From the IMG/VR virus record IMGVR_UViG_3300017917_003822, positions 124,001 through 188,000 of that record: 64,000 nt of DNA. One strand, 5' to 3'. The position numbers were made by a program, and so were the translations under genes. The notes beneath the pieces were generated by a model. It was not told the DNA's origin and made no database searches. It saw nothing but the letters and a program-made list of their open reading frames with translations. Position 1 is the first letter of the stretch; each line of letters begins with the position of its first letter. Below, in pieces: positions 21 through 47,669 of the stretch.

Positions 21-2984
21 ATGGCTCAATTTCCAATCAATCCCCGAATAGGGCAAGCTTTTCTAGCAGATTCCAAAATATATGTTTGGAGTGGAACTCA
101 GTGGGTTGCGGCACAGGTTGGAGGGACAGGAGACGGATCATCAGGAACCTCTGGAACTAGTGGAGTTGATGGAAATTTTTATGGATCCTCTGGAACCTCT
201 GGAACCTCCGGGGTTAATGGATCCAGTGGAACAAGTGGTACACCGGGATCTTCTGGAATATCAGGATCTTTCGGAACAAGTGGATCTAGTGGAACATCAG
301 GATCTACCGGAAGTCCAGGATCTTCTGGGTCTAGTGGATCTTCTGGTGCTAATGGTTCGTCTGGAACATCAGGAATTAATGGATCCAGTGGAACAAGTGG
401 CTCGAATGGATCATCAGGAACTTCTGGATCTAGTGGAAGCAGCGGAACTTCAGGCACTAGAGGATCTAGTGGAACTTCGGGTTCTTCGGGAACATCTGGT
501 GCTAATGGTTCTTCAGGAACATCTGGATCTAATGGATCTTCGGGTGTCAGTGGAATTAATGGTATAGATGGAACTTCTGGATCTAGTGGAACTTCAGGTA
601 CTAGAGGATCTAGTGGAACTTCTGGTTCTTCAGGAACATCTGGTGCTAATGGTTCTTCAGGAACCTCTGGTGCTAACGGTTCATCGGGTTCATCGGGAGT
701 TAGTGGAATTAATGGTGTTGATGGAACCTCAGGATCTAGTGGAAGTAGCGGAACTTCAGGTACTGGCGGATCGAGTGGATCTTCGGGTTCTTCCGGAACA
801 TCTGGCTCTAATGGTTCTTCAGGAACATCTGGTGCTAATGGTTCATCGGGATCTTCGGGTGTCAGTGGAATTAATGGTGTTGATGGAACTTCAGGATCTA
901 GCGGTACTTCTGGTGTTAATGGCTCTAGTGGAACATCCGGTTCATCAGGATCGTCAGGAACCAGTGGAATCACCGGATCGTCGGGATCTAGTGGATCTTC
1001 GGGTGTCAGTGGAATTAATGGTGTTGATGGAACTTCAGGATCTAGCGGTACTTCTGGTGTTAATGGATCTAGTGGTACTTCGGGATCTGGTGGATCGAGT
1101 GGAACTTCAGGATCTGGTGGATCTAGTGGAACTTCGGGATCTAGAGGATCTTCAGGAACCAGTGGGACAAGTGGATCCTCAGGGTCTAGTGGAGATTCTG
1201 GCTCTAGTGGAACATCCGGTTCATCAGGATCGTCAGGAACCAGTGGAATCACTGGATCGTCGGGATCTAGTGGATCGTCGGGTGTCAGTGGAGTTAATGG
1301 TGTTGATGGAACCTCAGGATCTAGTGGTACCTCTGGTGTTAATGGATCTAGTGGTACTTCGGGATCTGGTGGATCGAGTGGAACTTCAGGATCTAGAGGA
1401 TCTTCGGGAACCAGTGGAACCAGTGGATCTTCAGGATCTAGTGGAGCTTCTGGATCTAGTGGTACCTCCGGTTCTAGTGGTTTATCAGGATCTAGTGGAA
1501 CTTCGGGATCTAGAGGATCTTCGGGAACCAGTGGAACCAGTGGATCTTCAGGATCTAGTGGATCTTCAGGAGTCAGCGGGGTTAACGGTGTTGATGGTTC
1601 TTCCGGATCCAGTGGAACATCCGGAAGTAACGGAACTCCGGGTTCTTCAGGTTCTTCAGGTTCTTCAGGTTCTTCAGGTTCTTCAGGTTCTTCAGGAACT
1701 TCGGGATCTAGAGGATCCAGTGGAACATCTGGTATAAACGGTTCTTCCGGCTCTTCGGGAACGTCAGGGTCCAGTGGAACATCAGGGACAAGAGGAACTA
1801 GCGGAACATCTGGTATAAGTGGAAACGACGCATCTAATTCAGGGAGATGGGAATATTCAAATTCGATTGCACCGACCAATCCAGGCACCAGCAGATTCTG
1901 TACAAATAGTTCTTCTCTAGGATCTGTTAATGTATTAAGTATTAGTATTTACGACATAAACTCGGTGGATTACACTAAATGGTTTCAAGCATCTGACACA
2001 TTGGAAAACAATGGATATCCGCTTTATTTACAGGTAACCGAGGTTGGATCCAATAGTATTATTGCAATCTTCCAAGTTAAGAAGGTCAATGATAATTCCA
2101 CTTATTTTGATATTGAATTTACTGGAACCCTGGCATTTAACGGAACTCTAAGTGGAGGAAAAATATACACGATTTCGTGGGTCTATAATGGAATAAACGG
2201 ATCTTCGGGAACATCAGGTATTAACGGAACCCCAGGTTCCAGTGGATCATCAGGAACTTCAGGTTCTCGTGGATCCTCGGGAACATCAGGTATTAACGGA
2301 ACCCCAGGTTCTAGTGGATCGTCGGGAACTTCGGGTTCTCGGGGATCTTCAGGAACCAGTGGAATTAGCGGATCCCCGGGATCTAGTGGATCCTCCGGTG
2401 TCAGTGGGGTTAATGGTGTAGACGGATCATCAGGAACCAGTGGAATTAGCGGATCCCCTGGATCTAGTGGATCATCTGGAACTTCTGGAACAAGTGGGGT
2501 TTCTGCAACTATAAATAGTAATGCTGACAACAGGGTAATTACTGGTAGTAACACTGCAGGGCAATTAAATGGTGAATCTGCTTTTACTTTCAATGGAACC
2601 ACCGCATATGTGAATGGAGCTCTTGGTGTAGGTACTGATACACCCACAACGGTTGGTTTAATTAGAGCAACGAACGATGTCGTAGCTTATTATTCCTCCG
2701 ATGAAAGACTGAAGGAAAACAAAGAAATTATCAAGAACCCACTGGATAAGCTAAATGGTCTTTCCGGATATGAGTTTGATTGGATACCTAAAAAGGGAAT
2801 ACATGAAAATGAAGGTAGAGACATCGGTGTAATTGCTCAGGAGGTCGAGAAAGTTTTTCCTCAGTTGGTTCAAACAAGAGATAATGGTTATAAAGCTGTA
2901 AAATACGAAAAGCTAGTGCCCGTTCTGATTGAGGCAATTAAGGAACTTCGAAATGAAATTGAAATTTTGAAGAGAAGAGATTAA
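21..2984 (+). CDS. Collagen-like Ser/Gly-rich tail fibre/spike with C-terminal intramolecular chaperone (peptidase S74-like)
   Basis: Long G-X-Y runs (GSS/GTS/GIN/GVD), a non-repetitive insert around aa 610-725, and a C-terminal SDERLKEN...GVIAQEVEKVFP...V.YEKLVPVLIEAIKEL typical of S74 chaperones. Confidence 0.85.
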   Translation: MAQFPINPRIGQAFLADSKIYVWSGTQWVAAQVGGTGDGSSGTSGTSGVDGNFYGSSGTSGTSGVNGSSGTSGTPGSSGISGSFGTSGSSGTSGSTGSPGSSGSSGSSGANGSSGTSGINGSSGTSGSNGSSGTSGSSGSSGTSGTRGSSGTSGSSGTSGANGSSGTSGSNGSSGVSGINGIDGTSGSSGTSGTRGSSGTSGSSGTSGANGSSGTSGANGSSGSSGVSGINGVDGTSGSSGSSGTSGTGGSSGSSGSSGTSGSNGSSGTSGANGSSGSSGVSGINGVDGTSGSSGTSGVNGSSGTSGSSGSSGTSGITGSSGSSGSSGVSGINGVDGTSGSSGTSGVNGSSGTSGSGGSSGTSGSGGSSGTSGSRGSSGTSGTSGSSGSSGDSGSSGTSGSSGSSGTSGITGSSGSSGSSGVSGVNGVDGTSGSSGTSGVNGSSGTSGSGGSSGTSGSRGSSGTSGTSGSSGSSGASGSSGTSGSSGLSGSSGTSGSRGSSGTSGTSGSSGSSGSSGVSGVNGVDGSSGSSGTSGSNGTPGSSGSSGSSGSSGSSGSSGTSGSRGSSGTSGINGSSGSSGTSGSSGTSGTRGTSGTSGISGNDASNSGRWEYSNSIAPTNPGTSRFCTNSSSLGSVNVLSISIYDINSVDYTKWFQASDTLENNGYPLYLQVTEVGSNSIIAIFQVKKVNDNSTYFDIEFTGTLAFNGTLSGGKIYTISWVYNGINGSSGTSGINGTPGSSGSSGTSGSRGSSGTSGINGTPGSSGSSGTSGSRGSSGTSGISGSPGSSGSSGVSGVNGVDGSSGTSGISGSPGSSGSSGTSGTSGVSATINSNADNRVITGSNTAGQLNGESAFTFNGTTAYVNGALGVGTDTPTTVGLIRATNDVVAYYSSDERLKENKEIIKNPLDKLNGLSGYEFDWIPKKGIHENEGRDIGVIAQEVEKVFPQLVQTRDNGYKAVKYEKLVPVLIEAIKELRNEIEILKRRD
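130..2510 (+). repeat. Coding 9/18-nt periodic repeats (GGATCTAGTGGAACTTCA-like) with larger duplicated blocks
   Basis: Visible recurrent ggatctagtgga/ggaacttc units; blocks such as GSSGVSGINGVDGTSGSSGTSG recur several times. Confidence 0.9.
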
Positions 2985-29089: not shown

Positions 29090-30514
29090 ATGGACTTACT
29101 TTCAGCTTTACAACAAGAGAATACCGTAACCGAGAATGGTATGGTGACTAACTCTAGCTCTCTGAAAAATACACTAGATCTTTTCTTTAGAATAGGTGCT
29201 TTGAGAGCAGCGGACCAACAGGATATAGTAAGACAATTTACTCTAGCTTTTGATGAGTCTCCTCAGGATGCTCTTAGAATCTTATTCTGGGCAAGAGATG
29301 TGAGAGGTGGTGCTGGTGAAAGAAGAGTTTTTAGAATCTGTATGTCTCACTTGGCTGAGAGCAATCCACAATCTCTGATTAAAAATTTACACCTAATCCC
29401 AGAATACGGTAGATGGGACGATCTGCTTGTTTTCGCAGGGACTAAGGTTGAGGATGATGCTTTCGACATAATTAAGACCGCATTATATAGTGCTGATAGA
29501 CTTTGTGCCAAATGGATGCCAAGAAAAGGAACCGTTTCCAATGCACTCAGAAAGTATTTGGGGCTAACTCCGAAGGAATATAGAAAACTTCTTGTCGAAA
29601 CCACTGATGTTGTTGAGCAAAAAATGTGTTCCAATAAATTCAACGAAATCGATTATTCAAAAGTTCCTTCACTTGCTGCCGCTAGATACCAGGCCGCATT
29701 TATTAAGAAGGATTCTGATAGATACACCGAATACTTATTAGAGCTGCGAAAACCAGAAGGTGAAAAAACAGCTAAGATTAATGCTTCCGCGGTCTACCCA
29801 TATGATGTTGTCAAATCTCTAAACAGAGGAGTTTGGGAGGTTGCAAATGAACAATGGAATGCACTGCCTAATTATATGGAAGGATCTAGTGAGATGGTAC
29901 TTCCGGTTGTTGATGTCTCTGGTTCAATGACGTCTCCCGTAAGTAGAGGAGGTACACTTAGCTGTATGGACGTTGCTGTTTCATTGGGTCTTTATATTTC
30001 GGAAAGAAATGATGGTCCTTTTAAAGATCATTTCATTACCTTCTCTGAAACTCCAGAATTACAAAAACTTGGTGGTAATTTAAAGGAAAGGTATTTACAA
30101 CTGCGATCATCTGAATGGGGAATGAGTACTAATTTGATCTCCGTATTTGATCTTATTTTGAATCAAGCAACCAAACATAATGTTCCACAGAACAACATGC
30201 CAACCAAAATTCTAATTCTTTCTGACATGGAATTCAACGAGGCGATAGAAGACGGTGAAAGTGTTTCGGCTATAAAAGCAATCAGATCTAAATATGATGC
30301 TGCTGGATATAAAACACCTGACGTAATATTCTGGAATATACAAAGCAGAAGAGGAAATAATATACCGGTCAGATTCGATGAGAGAGGAACTGCTTTAATC
30401 TCAGGATTCTCACCTTCCATTATGAAGTCACTACTTAATGGAAAATCGATTAGTCCTATGGATATCATGTACGAAACTATAAATTCACCTAGATATGAAA
30501 GTATTAAGGCCTGA
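29090..30514 (+). CDS. TROVE/Ro60-like vWA protein (DUF2828 family)
   Basis: FWARDVRGGAGERR, EYGRWDDL, AKWMPR, MIDAS VVDVSGSM, ILILSDMEF, ISGFSPS. Confidence 0.88.
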   Translation: MDLLSALQQENTVTENGMVTNSSSLKNTLDLFFRIGALRAADQQDIVRQFTLAFDESPQDALRILFWARDVRGGAGERRVFRICMSHLAESNPQSLIKNLHLIPEYGRWDDLLVFAGTKVEDDAFDIIKTALYSADRLCAKWMPRKGTVSNALRKYLGLTPKEYRKLLVETTDVVEQKMCSNKFNEIDYSKVPSLAAARYQAAFIKKDSDRYTEYLLELRKPEGEKTAKINASAVYPYDVVKSLNRGVWEVANEQWNALPNYMEGSSEMVLPVVDVSGSMTSPVSRGGTLSCMDVAVSLGLYISERNDGPFKDHFITFSETPELQKLGGNLKERYLQLRSSEWGMSTNLISVFDLILNQATKHNVPQNNMPTKILILSDMEFNEAIEDGESVSAIKAIRSKYDAAGYKTPDVIFWNIQSRRGNNIPVRFDERGTALISGFSPSIMKSLLNGKSISPMDIMYETINSPRYESIKA

Positions 30515-41844: not shown

Positions 41845-42291
41845 ATGAAATCGGATTATTTTTTAAATGTTGAGCTAATTTCTAAAAGAAGGCTTACACA
41901 GAAGGATCTGGAGGAGTTTAGAAATTCCATAGAATTAAATGACGAGTTTTTAAGCTTCTGTATGCTTTTTTCAAAGCACTCCGAGATAAATTTCTCGGGA
42001 CATCTTGAGGTTTATATCGAGGATCAACCCTTCGAGACTGATTTATTACTGGATGTTGAAAGCATAATTGATGTTATTGAGGATTTTATACCTGGAGGCT
42101 GGGACGATGATTCTAAAGTTGAATGGATATCAGAACTCCCACCAAGCACAACTTATGTTTGGTTCAAGGAAGGTAATAGCTGGAAATCTCTTAGTAGAGA
42201 ACACGAAAGAGGTTTTTTAGGAGAGGATGAGGAATGGGACGATGATGATTACCCAAATTACGATGACAGAGATTTTAGTGAGGATTATTAA
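41845..42291 (+). CDS. Hypothetical acidic protein
   Basis: ORF. Confidence 0.6.
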   Translation: MKSDYFLNVELISKRRLTQKDLEEFRNSIELNDEFLSFCMLFSKHSEINFSGHLEVYIEDQPFETDLLLDVESIIDVIEDFIPGGWDDDSKVEWISELPPSTTYVWFKEGNSWKSLSREHERGFLGEDEEWDDDDYPNYDDRDFSEDY

Positions 42292-42310
42292 TTGTTGATA
42301 TATAAAAAAC

Positions 42311-43332
42311 TGTATTGAAAGGTGCCTTTCATACTTAGTGTCCCGGGTCAATTAAGGCCCTAGAGTTATTCAATTTTGAGTAGCAAAGGGATTTTAAAAA
42401 AAAGGTAAAAAATGAAAAACAACAGAAGACTGGTCTTAAATAGTAAAGACCAAAAACCAGAAGCTTGGGTTGCCGTATCCAACAACAGACAAAAAATCTA
42501 CGGCTCAGATAACGATCTAGTTTATCTTGAAGACGGACAGGAGTTCCAAATAGAACTCTTTAATCCCACACAAATTTCCTATCTAGCAAAAATCTACCTA
42601 AATGGTAAGCTCATCAGTAGTTCAGGATTAGTTATTAAACCTGGACAGAGATACTTTTTGGATAGACACATCGACGAAAAGAAAAAACTACTTTTCTCAA
42701 CGTACGATGTTGATGATGCTCCAGAAGTTAGGAAAGCAATCAAAAACAATGGAAAGATTAAGGTTGAGTTTTATCCCGAGGTGTTTATTAGCAACTCTTG
42801 GATCAATAGCGGTACCACTTACGTTCCGTATAACCAACAATGGGGTGGTAATAATCTAACCATTCCAAATAATCCAATAACATGGGCAACAACATTTGGT
42901 AGGACAAACACCTATTTTTCGGGTGACTTGAACACTAAGACCACAACTAATCTTAACTACACTTCGACAAATACCGGAGGGATTACGTTCAGCACCGCAA
43001 ATTCAATATCTGGAAATTCAGTAGCATTCAACTCGAATACAGGAGAGATTAAATGCTCAACTGCAGGATCATTTGAAACTGGTAGAATAGAGAAGGGTGA
43101 AAAATCGGACCAAACATTTGGAAGCGATTACGGTTCATACTCATCAATTTGGAGTTATTGTTCCGAATACACAATCATGCCAAGATCCGTTAAGCCAGTC
43201 GAGGTTTCTGAAATCAGATCATATTGTACCGGCTGTGGAACTAGAATGAAAAAGAAAACATGGAAATTCTGCCCTAACTGCGGGGAATCTCTAGAATAAT
43301 TTAATTTCGTATAAAGGCACCTTTTCAATACA
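42311..43332. repeat. Imperfect ~24 bp inverted repeat flanking the 42412-43299 gene (arms 42311-42334 and 43309-43332)
   Basis: TGTATTGAAA-GGTGCCTTTCATAC versus reverse complement TGTATTGAAAAGGTGCCTTT-ATAC. Confidence 0.9.
42412..43299 (+). CDS. Conserved hypothetical protein with beta-rich N-domain, T/N/S-rich linker and C-terminal zinc ribbon
   Basis: DGQEFQIELFNP; C-terminal CTGCG...KFCPNCG. Confidence 0.75.
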   Translation: MKNNRRLVLNSKDQKPEAWVAVSNNRQKIYGSDNDLVYLEDGQEFQIELFNPTQISYLAKIYLNGKLISSSGLVIKPGQRYFLDRHIDEKKKLLFSTYDVDDAPEVRKAIKNNGKIKVEFYPEVFISNSWINSGTTYVPYNQQWGGNNLTIPNNPITWATTFGRTNTYFSGDLNTKTTTNLNYTSTNTGGITFSTANSISGNSVAFNSNTGEIKCSTAGSFETGRIEKGEKSDQTFGSDYGSYSSIWSYCSEYTIMPRSVKPVEVSEIRSYCTGCGTRMKKKTWKFCPNCGESLE

Positions 43333-43389
43333 ATTTACGAAATTTTATCAACAAATAACACTATAAATTCTTATTAAAAGAAAAATTAA

Positions 43390-45342
43390 GTGAGAATAGC
43401 CTACATAGTACCACATCTTTCAACCGGTGGGATGCCTGAATATCTCAGAAATAAGATAGAAAAGTTAAGAGAAGTTTCCGATGTTTGGGTTTTTGAAAAA
43501 TTTAAAGAACCGGTCTATAATACCATTCGTTTAAGAATTGAGAAAATAATAGGTGAGGAGAGGATAATAACATGGGGAAAGGATCAAACTGGATCTTTCT
43601 TGAATAAGATTTTTGAAATAAATCCTGACATTATTCATTTTGAGGAACCATGCGAACAATTTGTCGATGATTTCCTTCTCGATGTAATATATTCAGGTGA
43701 TAGAAAATATAAAATATTTGAGACCCTTCATGACTCCTCGATTAAACCGGAGGAGAAAAGATACCTTCCTGATAAGTTTATCGTTGTTAGTCCATGGCAG
43801 GTTTATTTACTTAAAGACCTTGGTGTCCCGATTGAGATTATTGAACACGAGCTTAGTGAAAAAATTCTACCGTCGAGAGAAGAATGTATGAATCAACTTG
43901 GGTTGGATCCCAATAAAAAACATGTTGTTCAGATAGGTATTTTTACCCCAAGAAAAAATCAGAAGGAAACATCTGAAATTGCTAGATTTTTACCTGACGT
44001 TCAATTCCATTTTGTTGGTACATTGGCCGATAATTATGCTTGGTATTGGGAACCGATAGTTAGAGGTCTTCCGCCAAATTGTAAAATATGGGGTGAAAGA
44101 GATGATGTTGATCTTTTTTATAAGGCATGTGATCTCGTCATATTTCCATCAGTAGAATTGTTTAATGACAAGGAGACAAGTCCACTAGTAATTAGAGAAA
44201 CCATCAACATCGGAACCAAATTACTACTAAGAAACTTACCTGTTTATGTTGGAATGTATCAGGAATCTGATAATGTCACATTTATGAAAAACACAGCAAT
44301 TGAAAATGCTAATCTAATAAAAAGTACACTAAATATGGAACTCACCGGAACAAATAACAGAAACTTAGAAATCAGATTTAATCCCGAAAATAATGAGATT
44401 TCATTCTCCTTTTTGAGAAATGATTTGGTAGGTAACTTCTGGATCTCAGTTAAGGATGTTGATTCAAACGCATGTATCTATGCTTTCCAAATAAATTTGG
44501 AAGGTCCATGGCAGAATTTCTGGTGCATTCCGATACCTAAAGAATTTTATGATTTCGGCGGTGACAAGAATTTCACTGGATTCAAATTAGAAATTTATGT
44601 GGATAAAATGGATTCTTCTCCACTCATTTCTGAGAATTTCATAATCAAGAAAAGGATTAATAAAAAGATGATACCTAGCAACCCTTTTATAAATTTCGAT
44701 CCAGTTTTCGTTAACTACTCTCAATTTTTTATCGACGGTATCTATAATTTATTCTTTGCTGGACAGAGAATAAAAACAGCTATCGACATTGGTGCTAATG
44801 TTGGTCTTTTTACTGAATGGGTGCTTGATAGATTCGGCAGTGATACGGAGGTGATCTCGGTGGAACCTAACGAAACCGCAGCAAGGGCTTTCCAGGAGAT
44901 TCATAAAGATAAGAATAATGTGAGATTAGCAAAATATGCTCTTTCGGACAAATCGGGTGAATTCATAGAGATGCTGGTAAACCCGGACAACAGCTTGATT
45001 TCAAGTATAGAAGGGACAGGTGAAGGATACAGTGAAAGGCAAACCGCTGAAACCATCACCCTGATGGATCTGATGGAGAAATATAACATGACAGGGGCTG
45101 ATCTATTAAAAGTTGACATAGAGGGAGCTGAATATCAGATGTTTGATGCTGTGACTTCGGATGATCTAAGAAGATTTAAGAATCTCCTGATAGAATTCCA
45201 TAATAATGATGGTCGAGCGACACAGCTTATTAAGAAAATCAGGGAGGCTGGATTTTATATCGATCTGAGAGATGATGACACTAGATACACAACGGACGAG
45301 AATAATGATAGAGGTACAATATTCGCAACAAGAATAGATTAA
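43390..45342 (+). CDS. GT4-like glycosyltransferase fused to an FkbM-family methyltransferase
   Basis: PHLSTGGMP, RKNQ, E..PLVIRE; IDIGANVG, SVEPN, LLKVDIEGAE. Confidence 0.88.
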   Translation: MRIAYIVPHLSTGGMPEYLRNKIEKLREVSDVWVFEKFKEPVYNTIRLRIEKIIGEERIITWGKDQTGSFLNKIFEINPDIIHFEEPCEQFVDDFLLDVIYSGDRKYKIFETLHDSSIKPEEKRYLPDKFIVVSPWQVYLLKDLGVPIEIIEHELSEKILPSREECMNQLGLDPNKKHVVQIGIFTPRKNQKETSEIARFLPDVQFHFVGTLADNYAWYWEPIVRGLPPNCKIWGERDDVDLFYKACDLVIFPSVELFNDKETSPLVIRETINIGTKLLLRNLPVYVGMYQESDNVTFMKNTAIENANLIKSTLNMELTGTNNRNLEIRFNPENNEISFSFLRNDLVGNFWISVKDVDSNACIYAFQINLEGPWQNFWCIPIPKEFYDFGGDKNFTGFKLEIYVDKMDSSPLISENFIIKKRINKKMIPSNPFINFDPVFVNYSQFFIDGIYNLFFAGQRIKTAIDIGANVGLFTEWVLDRFGSDTEVISVEPNETAARAFQEIHKDKNNVRLAKYALSDKSGEFIEMLVNPDNSLISSIEGTGEGYSERQTAETITLMDLMEKYNMTGADLLKVDIEGAEYQMFDAVTSDDLRRFKNLLIEFHNNDGRATQLIKKIREAGFYIDLRDDDTRYTTDENNDRGTIFATRID

Positions 45343-45344
45343 TA

Positions 45345-47669
45345 ATGAGAATAGCTCAAGTAACACCAGGCAACATACCAATTCCAACTAAGGGGTGGGG
45401 TGCTGTTGAAAAAATAATATGGGAGTATACCAAGGTTTTGAGAAATCTAGGTCACGAGGTTGAAGTACTTTATGCTGATGATGTTATACCCGGTGAGTGG
45501 GATGTTGTTCATGTTCACATGGCAAATTTAGCCTTGATCTTAAAGGAGAGAGGTATACCATATGTTTTCTCGCATCACGATCATCACGCATATCATTTCG
45601 GTAAGAACTCGGATGTTTATAAACAGAATTTAGAGGCAATAAAAGGGTCACAACTTTCTTTTGTTCATGCTAAATATCTGGTTGAATATTTTGGTTCACC
45701 TAAGAATCTCAGATATTTGAATCACGGAGCAAATACTAAGGATTATGGATTTTTTGACAGATCCAGAAATGTAGAAGAAGGTAATATTAGACTTCTGATG
45801 ATGGCAAACAATGGGCTTGGTGGAAATCATATGTATGACAGGAAGGGATTTATTCCTGGGGTAGAAGCTGCAAGATTACTTGGATTACCTATCACCATAA
45901 TTTGTCCTAAATCCGGTAATTACGATCTTATCTCTAGCATTAGTCCATATGATAAGATGAATGTTCTATATGATTTAGAATATGAGGATACGCTAACTGA
46001 GATGTCAAATCACGAGATATTCCTTAATCCCTCTATGTTAGAAGCAGGACATCCAAATCTAACAGTAACCGAGTCTATCGCCAGAGGGGTACCTGTAGTC
46101 GGAACAGCGGAGGAGGAGATACCGGGGATCAGAAGAATACCACTTCCAACAGATTTAACCGTTGATGTCAATGATCTTGTTGATGGAATCTCTGAAGTCA
46201 TATCCAAATACCCGTCATATGTTCTCGAATGCAGGGATCAGAGAGAAATTTATTCCTGGGAGGTTGTGGTGTCCAGGATGTTAATGGACTACACAAATCA
46301 TTTGAATATAAGTCAGAAAAGTCTTCTTCTTGACAGCTATAAATCAACAACCAAGAGAGAAGTTTCAAAAACACCTCATAGCGGGATCTATTCCTGGTTT
46401 AAATCTAGACCTTTCTTGTATAAGTCAACGAAGACTAATTATGGAACTTCCGTTTCTTTTATTGACAAAATCACTGGTGAAATCATACATAAATGCAATT
46501 TCCCGACAGAACCTAGATCCTGGATACGTGCCATCTTTCCATCGGATAGGTATATTGATTGGAAAATAGTTGTTAGAGAAGGGGCAAAAATAATACATGA
46601 GAATGAGATGGATCTCCGAAATCATCACGTTCTGGTTAGAGGAGCCAACTCGGAGGACTATCAAAAACTAATTGAGTTTACCAATCTAACTCATTGTATA
46701 CTAACCGTTGATTCTGATAGTGATCTTCCATTTTTTAAATTAAAAGAAAACACAAACGATCATTATTATCTTGAGTTAAATATGAGCCAGATTTTGGACT
46801 TCTTCATAGAGAAGCCTAAGGTACAAAAAAGAACTCTGATAAACTTATCTCCTGAGTCTCTAGGTGACAATATTGCGTTCGTCCCATATGCAAACGAATA
46901 TGGTAAAAAAATTGGGGAGATAGTGGATGTTCACTGTAAGTATGCATTCCTATTTGATGGAGTTTATGAATACATTAACTTTATTGACAACCCGGATTCT
47001 CAAAAATACACAGACTATATTAACATCGATTATCTTTTCGATGTTCCGCTTCAGAGAGGATTCTCCGACCAATTGCTTCTAAATTATGAGGAGATTCGTC
47101 CAAGGGTAAAAGAACCTTCAGGTCAACCACAAAAAATTACCGGGAAATATATCTGTTTTTCCATGCACAGTACTGCTCAGGCTAAGCATTGGAATAATAA
47201 CAATTCTTGGTCTAAATTGTGTGATGAGCTTAAAAAGGTTGGTCTTAAGGCAGTTTGTATCGACAGACATTACTCGTTTGGCATAGAGGGTCATTGGAAC
47301 GAGATACCATCCAACTGCATAAATATGACTGGAGGAGACCTGAATAGTATGTCATTACTCATTCAAAATTGTGAGTTTTTCATAGGATTATCAAGCGGAT
47401 TGTCTTGGTTGGCACATGGTCTAGGTAAGAAAGTCGTTATGATCTCCGGGGTAACATCCAAAGATAATGAGTTTACCAAAGATTGCATCAGATTGCACAG
47501 AGAAGATGTTTGTAATTCGTGTTTCAATAAACCAGATCAATATAAGTTCGACAAGGGAGATTGGCTTTGGTGTCCTGTTCACAAAGGAACGCCAAGAGCT
47601 TTTGAATGCACAAAGAAGATCTCAGCCAAACAGGTTATGGATTCACTGAAAGCAAATAAGTGGATATAG
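45345..47669 (+). CDS. GT4-like domain fused to an Aah/TibC-type (autotransporter) O-heptosyltransferase-like domain
   Basis: N-terminal IP.KGWGAVEK, EAGHP; C-terminal SLGDNIAF, HSTAQAKHWN, FIGLSSGLSWLAH, C.SC...WLWCP.H...ECTK. Confidence 0.8.
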   Translation: MRIAQVTPGNIPIPTKGWGAVEKIIWEYTKVLRNLGHEVEVLYADDVIPGEWDVVHVHMANLALILKERGIPYVFSHHDHHAYHFGKNSDVYKQNLEAIKGSQLSFVHAKYLVEYFGSPKNLRYLNHGANTKDYGFFDRSRNVEEGNIRLLMMANNGLGGNHMYDRKGFIPGVEAARLLGLPITIICPKSGNYDLISSISPYDKMNVLYDLEYEDTLTEMSNHEIFLNPSMLEAGHPNLTVTESIARGVPVVGTAEEEIPGIRRIPLPTDLTVDVNDLVDGISEVISKYPSYVLECRDQREIYSWEVVVSRMLMDYTNHLNISQKSLLLDSYKSTTKREVSKTPHSGIYSWFKSRPFLYKSTKTNYGTSVSFIDKITGEIIHKCNFPTEPRSWIRAIFPSDRYIDWKIVVREGAKIIHENEMDLRNHHVLVRGANSEDYQKLIEFTNLTHCILTVDSDSDLPFFKLKENTNDHYYLELNMSQILDFFIEKPKVQKRTLINLSPESLGDNIAFVPYANEYGKKIGEIVDVHCKYAFLFDGVYEYINFIDNPDSQKYTDYINIDYLFDVPLQRGFSDQLLLNYEEIRPRVKEPSGQPQKITGKYICFSMHSTAQAKHWNNNNSWSKLCDELKKVGLKAVCIDRHYSFGIEGHWNEIPSNCINMTGGDLNSMSLLIQNCEFFIGLSSGLSWLAHGLGKKVVMISGVTSKDNEFTKDCIRLHREDVCNSCFNKPDQYKFDKGDWLWCPVHKGTPRAFECTKKISAKQVMDSLKANKWI

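What the first reader, a model, noticed from the sequence alone, without database searches (positions are those of the whole stretch)
42297..43332. Whole-gene transcript closed by a ~24 bp 5'-3' duplex
Seen: arm 1 (42311-42334) begins just after the GATATATA promoter and arm 2 (43309-43332) begins 10 nt after the stop; 23 positions pair with two single-nt bulges. Arm 1 can also fold on itself (GAAAGG-TG-CCTTTC), and the leader has further hairpins (GGGTC-AATTAA-GGCCC; TATTCAA/TTGAGTA). The enclosed gene is an uncharacterised zinc-ribbon protein. Inference: an RNA switch, RNase III processing or circularisation of a ~1 kb mRNA; less likely an invertible DNA segment, as no recombinase is nearby.
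Basis: partly seen in the sequence, partly recalled or inferred. Interest (0 to 1): 0.75.

Follow-up and report, generated by a model that had tools for sequence, protein, structure and literature searches.

The report
Phage mRNA closed end to end
One gene of a 270-kb phage, like its relatives in dozens of other large phages, is flanked by sequences that let the two ends of its messenger RNA pair with each other; the sequences differ between lineages but the pairing is kept, so this is probably a selected way to close, protect or control the message.

Summary
Arms 42311-42334 and 43309-43332 form 23 pairs with two one-base bulges. On its own this is only borderline significant in the 270-kb genome. 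Comparison with relatives settles it. In 59 of 69 distinct homologous loci a helix joins the same two places, right after the promoter box and 1-20 nt after the stop codon. About 15 different arm sequences are used. Cognate 5'/3' partners pair far better than swapped ones (-21.3 vs -13.4 kcal/mol, 0 of 20,000 permutations). Full-length folding predicts the helix in 12 of 12 representatives.

Arm 1 ends flush against a three-way-junction leader that is itself strongly supported (18 of 20 pairs compensatory, 96.7% of cells paired, not in Rfam). Arm 2 abuts a canonical terminator wherever one exists (22 of 22). Both arms therefore lie inside the transcription unit, at its ends.

My best reading is a non-covalently closed mRNA of the hbs / icaR / hok kind that protects the ends. 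It may also couple translation to an intact 3' end.

Inversion, a mobile cassette and chance are disfavoured. RNase III cutting, a Shine-Dalgarno switch and ligase circularisation remain open. No transcript data could be obtained. The G:U strand-bias test was inconclusive.

The parts
42297..42304 (+). Promoter-like box GATATATA, 6 nt upstream of arm 1
   Evidence: There are 11 copies in the window, 10 on the + strand, against 4.3 expected. Most lie just upstream of ORFs. A TATA-rich box stands in the same place in related loci. In the GTTAAC clade a TTGACA-17-TATAxT promoter-like site occupies it. Promoter activity is inferred, not shown.
42311..42334 (+). Arm 1, the 5' strand of the long-range helix. 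It can also fold on itself (GAAAGG/CCTTTC) and carries GCCTTT, complementary to the SD-like AAAGGT.
   Evidence: It forms 23 pairs with arm 2 in the full-length MFE, mean pair probability 0.92. Its 3' end is flush with P0 of the leader.
42335..42397 (+). Leader three-way junction. P0 is 42335-42344 with 42388-42397.
   Evidence: RNAalifold gives 17 of 20 pairs compensatory. On 70 distinct sequences 96.7% of cells are paired, 18 of 20 pairs are compensatory, and slid controls give 36-50%. Covariance model R1 hits once per locus in 85 loci and only here in the window. No Rfam match.
42398..42411 (+). A-rich spacer with the Shine-Dalgarno-like AAGGT (42402-42406) before the ATG
   Evidence: It is complementary to GCCTTT in arm 1.
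42412..43299 (+). ORF of 295 aa: an Ig-like beta-sandwich (residues 12-127 plus 217-257), a disordered S/T/N/G-rich insert (128-216) and a C-terminal CxxC...CxxC zinc ribbon. Function unknown.
   Evidence: There are more than 740 homologues, found on virus records and metagenomic contigs. They include Lak megaphages and other huge uncultured phages of 460-735 kb.
43309..43332 (+). Arm 2, the 3' strand of the long-range helix
   Evidence: In relatives that have a canonical terminator the equivalent arm lies directly upstream of it in 22 of 22. A near-identical strain in run X18 has C>T at 43331, which turns a G:C pair into G:U.
43303..43348 (+). Local alternative structure: a 9-bp stem, 43303-43311 with 43336-43344, encloses arm 2 and is followed by TTAT. 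It is terminator-like and cannot coexist with the full long-range helix.
   Evidence: -6.1 kcal/mol, z = -1.8. It is seen only in the nearest relatives. RNAalifold finds no consensus 3'-UTR fold across 17 clade members. No canonical terminator was found in this clade.
42288..42300 (.). Outer 13-nt inverted match with 43346-43358 (92% complementary). It lies outside the promoter box and the U-run and is probably not part of the element.
   Evidence: the repeat finder I10. A weak, AT-rich extension is seen only in the window and L017.

Best explanation
The gene is transcribed as a roughly 1-kb mRNA whose two ends pair with each other. The first about 24 nt of the transcript (arm 1) begin just after the promoter box. 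They pair with about 24 nt of the 3' UTR (arm 2) that begin 10 nt after the stop codon. The helix is built into a larger architecture. The 3' end of arm 1 is flush with the outer helix (P0) of a conserved three-way-junction leader. In most relatives the 3' end of arm 2 is flush with the intrinsic terminator hairpin. Terminator, closing helix and leader could therefore stack into one near-continuous rod, with the 5' end of the mRNA paired beside its 3' end, and with the stop codon and the start codon close to the same junction. Shown: the complementarity, its conservation through complete sequence turnover, its fixed position, and thermodynamic dominance in full-length folds. Inferred: that the promoter and terminator define the transcript ends; that the helix forms in vivo; and its purpose. 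I take the most likely purpose to be protection of both ends from 5'-end-dependent and 3'-exonucleolytic decay, as in B. subtilis hbs mRNA, possibly with translation tied to an intact 3' end.
For: (1) Same-place helices occur in relatives with about 15 different arm sequences, for example GGTGCCTTT, AGGAAAGAGCC, TTGCGTTAACT, GACCTTGTGGTT, GGAACCTCAC, GACGGTTTCCTTTACCG, GGTCTCACTTTGTT and TTTATAGCTGTTCG.
(2) With the leader model as anchor, 59 of 69 distinct loci have a helix of -13.5 kcal/mol or better, against a non-cognate median of -9.7.
(3) Among 19 representatives sharing less than 60% protein identity, the cognate mean is -21.3 against a permuted mean of -13.4 +/- 0.9 (z = -8.7, 0 of 20,000), and 10 of 19 cognates rank first.
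(4) Within the window's clade there are compensatory pairs: A:U to G:C at ATAC/GTAC and G:C to A:U at TTG/TTA.
(5) Full-length MFE and partition-function folds place the helix in 12 of 12 representatives, with 12-31 pairs and mean probability 0.73-0.96.
(6) Arm 1 ends within 3 nt of P0 in 58 of 59 positive loci.
(7) Arm 2 is upstream of or abutting the terminator in 22 of 22 loci that have a canonical one, and never beyond it. Arm 1 always follows the -10-like box.
(8) The adjoining leader is certainly an RNA structure on the + strand: 18 of 20 pairs are compensatory and several G:U pairs are conserved.
(9) Direct-repeat scores are at background.
(10) The element is unique in the genome.
Against: No transcript ends, RNA structure probing or expression data exist; the three RNA runs that hold the phage carry only thin contigs. 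A strand-specific excess of G:U over A.C mismatches, expected for selection on the + strand RNA, was not seen in the long-range helix (93 vs 95 pairs; 8 vs 7 internal mismatches). In the window's own clade no canonical terminator was found, and a local stem competes with the helix, so the 3' end of this particular transcript is undefined. Ten of 69 loci, together with the Lak phages and three of the huge uncultured phages, show no helix. The stabilising function is an analogy with hbs, not a result.
Confidence: 0.7

Rival explanations
1. A three-partner translational switch with hok-like logic, reversed. Arm 1 carries an anti-Shine-Dalgarno stretch. It pairs with arm 2 while the 3' end is intact, leaving the ribosome site free. 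It folds back on the ribosome site, or on itself, when the 3' UTR is missing or not yet made. Only complete transcripts would then be translated. This extends the best explanation and could hold alongside it.
For: Arm 1 is complementary to the SD-like element 7-12 nt before the AUG in many clades, and the two change together: GCCUUU/AAAGGU, UUUCCUU/AAGGAAA, ACCUUGU/AUAAGGU, CUCGU/ACGAG, GUUAACU/AGUUAAU, GGUCUC/GAGAUU. The cognate mean is -5.9 against a permuted -4.2 +/- 0.4 kcal/mol, 0 of 20,000. Removing the 3' UTR in silico moves arm 1 onto the initiation region in 6 of 14 representatives. hok mRNA works by a comparable exchange of partners (PMC9841398).
Against: The representatives are not independent; several share arms and SD. 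In 5 of 14 representatives arm 1 falls back on itself, and the predicted pairing of the initiation region rises only modestly. In the window the leader-only MFE leaves the SD open. Arms with CCUU will match any AAGG-type SD.
Confidence: 0.25
2. The helix is an RNase III processing site that trims both ends of the transcript at once, as the stems flanking 16S and 23S rRNA do.
For: The helix has 23 bp in the window and 22-31 bp in L016, L027, L044, L049 and L095. The icaR 5'/3' duplex is cut by RNase III (PMC7821165).
Against: Many clades have only 12-14 bp: L051, L054, L067 and L102. That is below the roughly two helical turns usual for RNase III (general knowledge). No Ribonucleas_3_3 domain is found in the phage genome, so a host enzyme would be needed. 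Cleavage was not tested.
Confidence: 0.12
3. Termination control in the window's clade. Arm 2 sits in the loop of a terminator-like stem, so pairing with arm 1 would prevent that stem and let transcription run into the downstream glycosyltransferase genes.
For: The 9-bp stem 43303-43311 / 43336-43344 followed by U's encloses arm 2 and is topologically exclusive with the full helix. The nearest relatives keep such a stem, with some changed pairs.
Against: The stem is weak (-6.1 kcal/mol, z = -1.8). It is not conserved across the clade. In most other clades arm 2 lies outside an independent, strong terminator.
Confidence: 0.08
4. A DNA-level element: an invertible segment, the terminal inverted repeats of a mobile gene cassette, or paired binding sites for a DNA-binding protein that loops the gene.
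For: Inverted repeats flank a whole gene. The G:U tests give no strand signal. The product has a zinc ribbon.
Against: The promoter box and terminator lie outside the arms, and the arms are flush with RNA helices. All 85 loci have the same orientation relative to the outside promoter and terminator. The upstream neighbour is conserved, adjacent and on the same strand in 27 loci at 33-66% identity. The one DNA run laid (X1, the likely source sample) gave collinear contigs with no joints. There is a single copy in the genome. No recombinase domain is found in the ten ORFs of 38.6-48.8 kb. The arm sequence turns over completely while the zinc ribbon stays nearly invariant. Arms of 12-24 nt are too short for gene conversion to keep them matched (inference).
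Confidence: 0.05
5. Chance complementarity between two AT-rich intergenic regions.
For: Two of 10 Markov shuffles of the genome reach the same score.
Against: The helix recurs at the same two places in 59 of 69 distinct loci with different sequences, and no permutation in 20,000 matches the cognate energies.
Confidence: 0.01

Closest known systems
B. subtilis hbs mRNA 5'/3'-UTR interaction (Braun, Durand & Condon 2017, PMC5737220)
   Same: A long-range helix (14 bp in hbs) joins the 5' UTR to the 3' UTR of a short monocistronic mRNA with a structured leader. In hbs it limits endonuclease access.
   Different: According to the review PMC7821165 the hbs 3' UTR is not conserved in close relatives. 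Here the helix is kept through complete sequence turnover across many phage lineages. It involves the very 5' end, is up to 24 bp long, and abuts both a three-way junction and the terminator. Its effect on decay has not been shown.
S. aureus icaR mRNA 5'/3'-UTR pairing (Ruiz de los Mozos 2013, PMC3868564)
   Same: The 3' UTR pairs with the 5' UTR of the same mRNA and interacts with the Shine-Dalgarno region. The duplex is an RNase III substrate.
   Different: In icaR the 3' UTR carries the anti-SD and masks the ribosome site. Here the 5' arm carries the anti-SD-like stretch and the 3' arm resembles the SD, so pairing would free the ribosome site and not block it.
hok mRNA tac/fbi fold-back (hok/sok of plasmid R1; PMC9841398)
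   Same: The 5' end pairs with the 3' end of the full-length mRNA. The 5' element has an alternative internal partner that governs access to the ribosome site. The state depends on 3' integrity.
   Different: hok encodes a small toxin, the closed form is translationally inert, and an antisense RNA is part of the system. Here the product is a 295-aa beta-sandwich/zinc-ribbon protein, no antisense partner is evident, and the predicted logic is the opposite.
S. aureus RNAIII 5'-3' pairing that delays hld translation (reviewed in PMC7821165)
   Same: Short end-to-end pairing within one RNA has been validated by probing.
   Different: That helix has 7 bp and lies in a regulatory RNA. A role of the pairing in translation has not been proved there.
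rRNA operon processing stems and phage T7 RNase III sites
   Same: In rRNA, a long helix is formed by sequences that flank a functional RNA of one to several kb (general knowledge).
   Different: Those are cleavage substrates of at least 20 bp. Here many clades have 12-14 bp and no cleavage is known.
Cyclisation sequences of flavivirus genomes; the eukaryotic closed-loop mRNA
   Same: End-to-end communication of a translated RNA, either by direct 5'-3' base pairing (e.g. PMC12168079, listed) or by protein bridges.
   Different: Those are RNA virus genomes or cap/poly(A)-dependent systems, not the mRNA of a DNA phage.

Membership tests
Bacterial/phage mRNA 5'/3'-UTR base pairing (hbs, icaR, RNAIII type) | Complementary segments in the 5' and 3' untranslated regions of the same gene | tested here: met
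   23 pairs in the window. 59 of 69 distinct homologous loci have such a helix.
Bacterial/phage mRNA 5'/3'-UTR base pairing (hbs, icaR, RNAIII type) | Pairing supported by compensatory changes | tested here: met
   Natural covariation: about 15 arm types. Cognate vs permuted energies give z = -8.7, 0 of 20,000. There are compensatory pairs within the clade. Engineered mutants were not made.
Bacterial/phage mRNA 5'/3'-UTR base pairing (hbs, icaR, RNAIII type) | Both segments lie on one transcript | tested here: inconclusive
   By sequence, arm 1 always follows the -10-like box, and arm 2 precedes the terminator in 22 of 22 loci. Transcript ends are not mapped, RNA runs are too thin, and the window's own clade has no canonical terminator.
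Bacterial/phage mRNA 5'/3'-UTR base pairing (hbs, icaR, RNAIII type) | The pairing changes mRNA stability or translation | not testable with these tools
   Needs half-life and reporter assays.
hok-type tac/fbi fold-back mRNA | The 5' element has an alternative internal partner that controls the ribosome binding site | tested here: inconclusive
   Arm 1 to SD complementarity is better than permuted, but the clades are not independent. In silico removal of the 3' UTR shifts arm 1 to the initiation region in only 6 of 14.
hok-type tac/fbi fold-back mRNA | Encodes a small membrane toxin controlled by an antisense RNA | tested here: not met
   The ORF has 295 aa and models as an Ig-like beta-sandwich plus zinc ribbon. 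Rfam finds no antisense or toxin-antitoxin RNA family above threshold.
RNase III processing stem | A double-stranded helix of about two turns (20 bp or more) | tested here: inconclusive
   Met in the window (23 bp) and several clades. Not met in others, which have 12-14 bp.
RNase III processing stem | Staggered cleavage within the helix | not testable with these tools
   No end-mapping data. No RNase III gene in the phage.
Invertible DNA segment (Gin/Cin/Hin or inverton type) | Both orientations occur; a site-specific recombinase is present | tested here: not met
   The orientation is identical in 85 of 85 loci. No joints in the one DNA run laid. No recombinase domain in the ten neighbouring ORFs. 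The whole genome was not scanned for recombinases.
Mobile cassette with terminal inverted repeats (MITE-like); PeSL cassettes of T4-type phages | Repeats form the outer boundary, occur in several copies, and the genomic context varies | tested here: not met
   Single copy. The promoter box and terminator lie outside the arms. The upstream neighbour is conserved in 27 loci. The repeats are inverted, not direct. The comparison with PeSL rests on my recollection of Arbiol et al. 2010.
Any Rfam 15 family | Match at the gathering score | tested here: not met
   The best hit scores 23.6 bits against a cut-off of 50 (snoR11, E = 0.28), which is chance level.

The most novel reading that the evidence does not exclude
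The closure is covalent. In most clades the 5' end of arm 1 pairs directly beside the base of the terminator hairpin, whose 3' arm carries the 3' end of the mRNA. The two ends of the transcript may therefore sit like a nick, or a short gap, in a continuous helix. That resembles the substrate of Rnl2-type RNA ligases, and this phage encodes both an Rnl2-like and an Rnl1-like ligase. After removal of the 5' pyrophosphate the message would be sealed into a circular, exonuclease-proof mRNA and translated from its A-rich internal ribosome site.
Probability: 0.05. Interest if true: 0.95.

Novelty: new variant of a known kind. Interest (0 to 1): 0.72.

Why it matters
The review PMC7821165 lists only a handful of direct 5'-3' UTR pairings in bacterial mRNAs (RNAIII/hld, icaR, hbs) and notes that functional 3' UTRs such as that of hbs are not conserved even between close species. 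Here one pairing is kept through complete sequence turnover across at least about 15 arm types, in large phages from freshwater, marine, soil and wastewater samples. It is also integrated flush with a new, strongly covarying three-way-junction leader and with the terminator.

If experiments confirm it, three things follow. It would be the best phylogenetically supported closed-loop mRNA outside eukaryotes and RNA viruses. It would give a defined system for asking what end-to-end closure does in a prokaryotic setting: decay protection, ribosome recycling, or a check on 3' integrity. And it would offer a compact natural design, with arms that can be changed freely, for stabilising bacterial or phage transcripts. 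It also marks this uncharacterised gene, conserved up to 735-kb phages, as one whose expression the phages control with unusual care.

Tried and rejected
- A DNA search of 5 kb around the locus against 50,697 phage records found no match.
- Rfam at a permissive threshold gave only chance hits.
- Public reads: 24 runs hold near-identical sequence. I laid three RNA runs and the source DNA run. The RNA runs gave four, one and one short low-depth contigs, with no information on ends, joints or circles.
- G:U strand asymmetry was tried in three ways: energies on the two strands (34 vs 29, p = 0.16); counts of G:U pairs (93 vs 95); and internal mismatches (28 vs 40 in over-extended alignments; 8 vs 7 in cleaned ones). 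None is informative.
- blastn-short self-comparison missed the bulged repeat, so I replaced it with a seeded Smith-Waterman scan.
- The first AlphaFold run with 25 sequences was poor (pLDDT 47).
I removed those rows and did not resend them.
- The 104-row model is confident but matches only generic Ig-like sandwiches (Foldseek best E = 0.026, VIA-align Z at most 7.0). The protein's function stays unknown.
- Sub-threshold Pfam hints (TssJ/SciN, Pam3 gp18) were not pursued.
- The local 3' stem is not a conserved terminator: RNAalifold on 17 3' UTRs finds no consensus.
- The outer 13-nt repeat (42288-42300 / 43346-43358) lies outside the promoter box and U-run and is not conserved, so I treat it as incidental.
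- Complex prediction was not used; no protein-protein claim is made.
- Literature searches for a phage precedent found none. The library does not cover subscription journals.
Full report
**Setting.** The window is bases 124001-188000 of a 270,629-bp, 99%-complete IMG/VR virus record. All long ORFs are on the + strand and G+C is about 36%. The genes include a DNA polymerase, topoisomerase II subunits, ribonucleotide reductase, RNase HII and a collagen-like tail fibre, so this is a large tailed phage. Near-identical DNA occurs in pond, lake, marine, salt-marsh, soil and wastewater metagenomes.

**The observation.** GATATATA lies 6 nt upstream of arm 1, and the stop codon ends 9 nt before arm 2. 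Each arm is itself nearly palindromic. Even so, the arms align far better as inverted than as direct copies (20.5 vs 8.0).

Within this genome the pair is the best-scoring gapped inverted repeat at 100-3000 nt spacing, but 2 of 10 Markov shuffles score as high. On its own sequence the finding would therefore be only suggestive.

**Relatives decide the matter.** The enclosed 295-aa protein has more than 740 homologues in metagenomic data. These include Lak megaphages and other huge uncultured phages of 460-735 kb. I fetched 93 viral loci and 9 GenBank phage loci.

An inverted repeat sits at the same two places in most of them, but its sequence differs from clade to clade. Examples are GGTGCCTTT, AGGAAAGAGCC, TTGCGTTAACT, GACCTTGTGGTT, GGAACCTCAC, GACGGTTTCCTTTACCG, GAGTGGTGCCCATAC, GCCTCGTG, GGTCTCACTTTGTT and TTTATAGCTGTTCG. 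Inside the window's own clade two pairs change on both sides: ATAC to GTAC, and TTG to TTA.

The quantitative tests agree:
- RNAduplex energies of cognate 5' and 3' flanks average -22.6 kcal/mol, against -14.5 for non-cognate pairs (63 loci).
- Among 19 representatives sharing less than 60% protein identity, the cognate mean is -21.3 and the permuted mean -13.4 +/- 0.9 (z = -8.7, 0 of 20,000 permutations).
- Folding the whole transcript of about 1 kb puts the long-range helix in the minimum-free-energy structure in 12 of 12 representatives. It has 12-31 pairs and mean pair probability 0.73-0.96. In the window it has 23 pairs at 0.92.

**The leader is a real RNA structure, and arm 1 is flush with it.** The approximately 65 nt after arm 1 are far better conserved than the protein.
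- RNAalifold on 50 leaders gives 20 pairs, 17 of them with compensatory changes.
- A covariance model built from that alignment finds exactly one hit per locus in 85 loci. There are no hits elsewhere in 539 kb and only one in the 64-kb window. The three Lak loci give none.
- On the resulting alignment of 70 distinct sequences, 96.7% of cells are paired and 18 of 20 pairs are compensatory. Sliding the partner by 1-3 columns drops pairing to 36-50%.
- Several pairs are conserved as G:U, which is meaningful only on the + strand RNA.
- Nothing in Rfam 15 matches.

Using this model as an anchor, 59 of 69 distinct loci have a long-range helix of -13.5 kcal/mol or better. In 58 of those 59 the 3' end of arm 1 lies within 3 nt of the first base of P0. 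Arm 2 begins 1-20 nt after the stop codon.

**Arm 2 is flush with the terminator.** In 22 distinct loci a canonical hairpin-plus-U-run terminator follows the gene. In all 22, arm 2 lies directly upstream of it or touches its A-run, and it never lies beyond it. Arm 1 always follows a TATA-rich box, or, in the GTTAAC clade, a TTGACA-17-TATAxT site. GATATATA itself recurs 11 times in the window, 10 of them on the + strand and mostly before ORFs.

Both arms therefore lie inside the predicted transcription unit at its two extremes. The closing helix could stack between the terminator and P0.

The window's own clade is the exception. No canonical terminator was found there. Arm 2 lies in the loop of a weak 9-bp stem followed by U's, and that stem cannot coexist with the full helix. 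The stem is limited to the nearest relatives, and 17 3' UTRs of the clade have no consensus local fold. The conserved feature is thus the long-range helix and not a local 3' structure.

**DNA-level readings.**
- The gene has the same orientation relative to the outside promoter and terminator in all 85 loci.
- Its upstream neighbour is conserved, adjacent and co-directional in 27 loci at 33-66% identity.
- The one DNA run laid (X1) shows no joints.
- The motif is single-copy.
- No recombinase domain occurs in the ten neighbouring ORFs.
- The zinc ribbon is nearly invariant while the arms turn over completely.

Inversion, a cassette with terminal inverted repeats, and paired operator sites are all poor fits.

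One expected signature of RNA-level selection is an excess of G:U over A.C mismatches in the long-range helix. It was not found. The counts are small and the helix ends are ambiguous, so I treat this as inconclusive and as the main internal weakness.

**Mechanism.** I take the structure to be a non-covalent end-to-end closure of a monocistronic mRNA.

The closest documented case is B. subtilis hbs. There a 14-bp 5'/3'-UTR interaction in an mRNA with a structured leader modulates RNase Y cleavage in the 5' UTR (PMC5737220; PMC7821165). A 5' end buried in a helix next to the terminator should likewise be a poor substrate for 5'-end-dependent decay, but that is an inference.

A second layer is possible. 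Arm 1 contains a stretch complementary to the SD-like element before the AUG, and the two change together across clades (-5.9 vs -4.2 +/- 0.4 kcal/mol, 0 of 20,000). Deleting the 3' UTR in silico sends arm 1 to the initiation region in 6 of 14 representatives and onto itself in 5. This resembles the partner exchange of hok mRNA (PMC9841398) with opposite logic: translation would be allowed only while the 3' end is intact. The evidence is moderate, because the clades in that test are not independent.

RNase III processing fits the 23-bp helix here but not the 12-14-bp helices elsewhere, and the phage has no RNase III gene. The phage does encode Rnl2-like and Rnl1-like RNA ligases but no RtcB. 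Given the juxtaposed ends, covalent circularisation cannot be excluded, but nothing supports it directly.

**The protein.** With 104 sequences AlphaFold gives pLDDT near 90 for residues 12-127 and 217-295 and a disordered S/T/N/G-rich insert at 128-216. The fold is a generic Ig-like beta-sandwich followed by a CxxC...CxxC ribbon. Structure searches give no specific match. The ESM Atlas neighbours are virus-only hypothetical proteins, some ending in a SHOCT domain in place of the ribbon. Function is unknown.

The element is a new variant of the rare class of prokaryotic 5'/3'-UTR pairings. It stands out for three reasons: its deep covariation, its flush integration with a new leader motif and the terminator, and its occurrence in large phages.

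No transcript-level data exist, so the function remains inferred.

Noticed in passing
window 42335-42397; L015-L103 upstream of each homologue: The leader three-way junction is a conserved RNA motif in its own right. It has 18 of 20 compensatory pairs, occurs once per locus in 85 loci, is absent from Rfam 15, and is not detected in the three Lak loci. What it binds or senses is unknown.
   Followed up: partly
L096 (Lak-B4), L097 (Lak-C1), L099 (Lak-A1), near locus position 1519-1575: The Lak megaphage homologues carry in-frame TAG codons and are open only if TAG is read through. This fits the TAG recoding that I recall being reported for Lak phages. The window's own genes are open under table 11.
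   Followed up: no
own genome G000:C1:223605-224156 and C1:213377-213928 (outside the window): The phage encodes an Rnl2-like (PF09414, 100.7 bits) and an Rnl1-like (PF09511, 80.5 bits) RNA ligase. It has no RtcB and no RNase III domain.
   Followed up: partly
window 3593, 7876, 10542, 17310, 26642, 33562, 37273, 42297, 48315, 63588 (+ strand): GATATATA occurs 11 times against 4.3 expected, 10 of them on the coding strand and mostly within about 100 nt upstream of an ORF start. It is a candidate promoter box of this phage.
   Followed up: partly
window 43331 and 43290, 42844, 43011, 43013 (run X18): A near-identical strain in an aquatic RNA-Seq library differs by C>T at 43331, inside arm 2. 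This converts the G42312:C43331 pair to G:U and keeps the helix.
   Followed up: no
window 43234-43289: The source-sample assembly (X1) breaks inside the zinc-ribbon coding region, at a 38-mer of about three times the depth of its flanks. A contig of another organism also shares 41 nt there. Several related phages in that pond probably share this conserved stretch.
   Followed up: no
L100 and L102 (LR745206, LR756502), C-termini of the homologues: In these huge phages of about 635-642 kb the zinc ribbon is replaced by a SHOCT-like C-terminal helix (...AGILTDEEF..KKSELLSKI). The 5'-3' helix and the leader are kept.
   Followed up: no
window 29090-30514: A 474-aa ORF matches DUF2828 plus DUF7788 and PHROG 850, which is annotated 'RNA-binding protein'. 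It could be relevant to RNA handling by this phage.
   Followed up: no
window 21-2984: A 987-aa ORF has strong collagen-like and tail-fibre PHROG matches in many repeated stretches.
   Followed up: no
window 43390-47669: Directly downstream lie a glycosyltransferase-1 / FkbM methyltransferase fusion (650 aa, GTG start) and a 774-aa protein with GT4 and GT9 signals. They are conserved next to the gene in 13 and 12 related loci respectively.
   Followed up: partly
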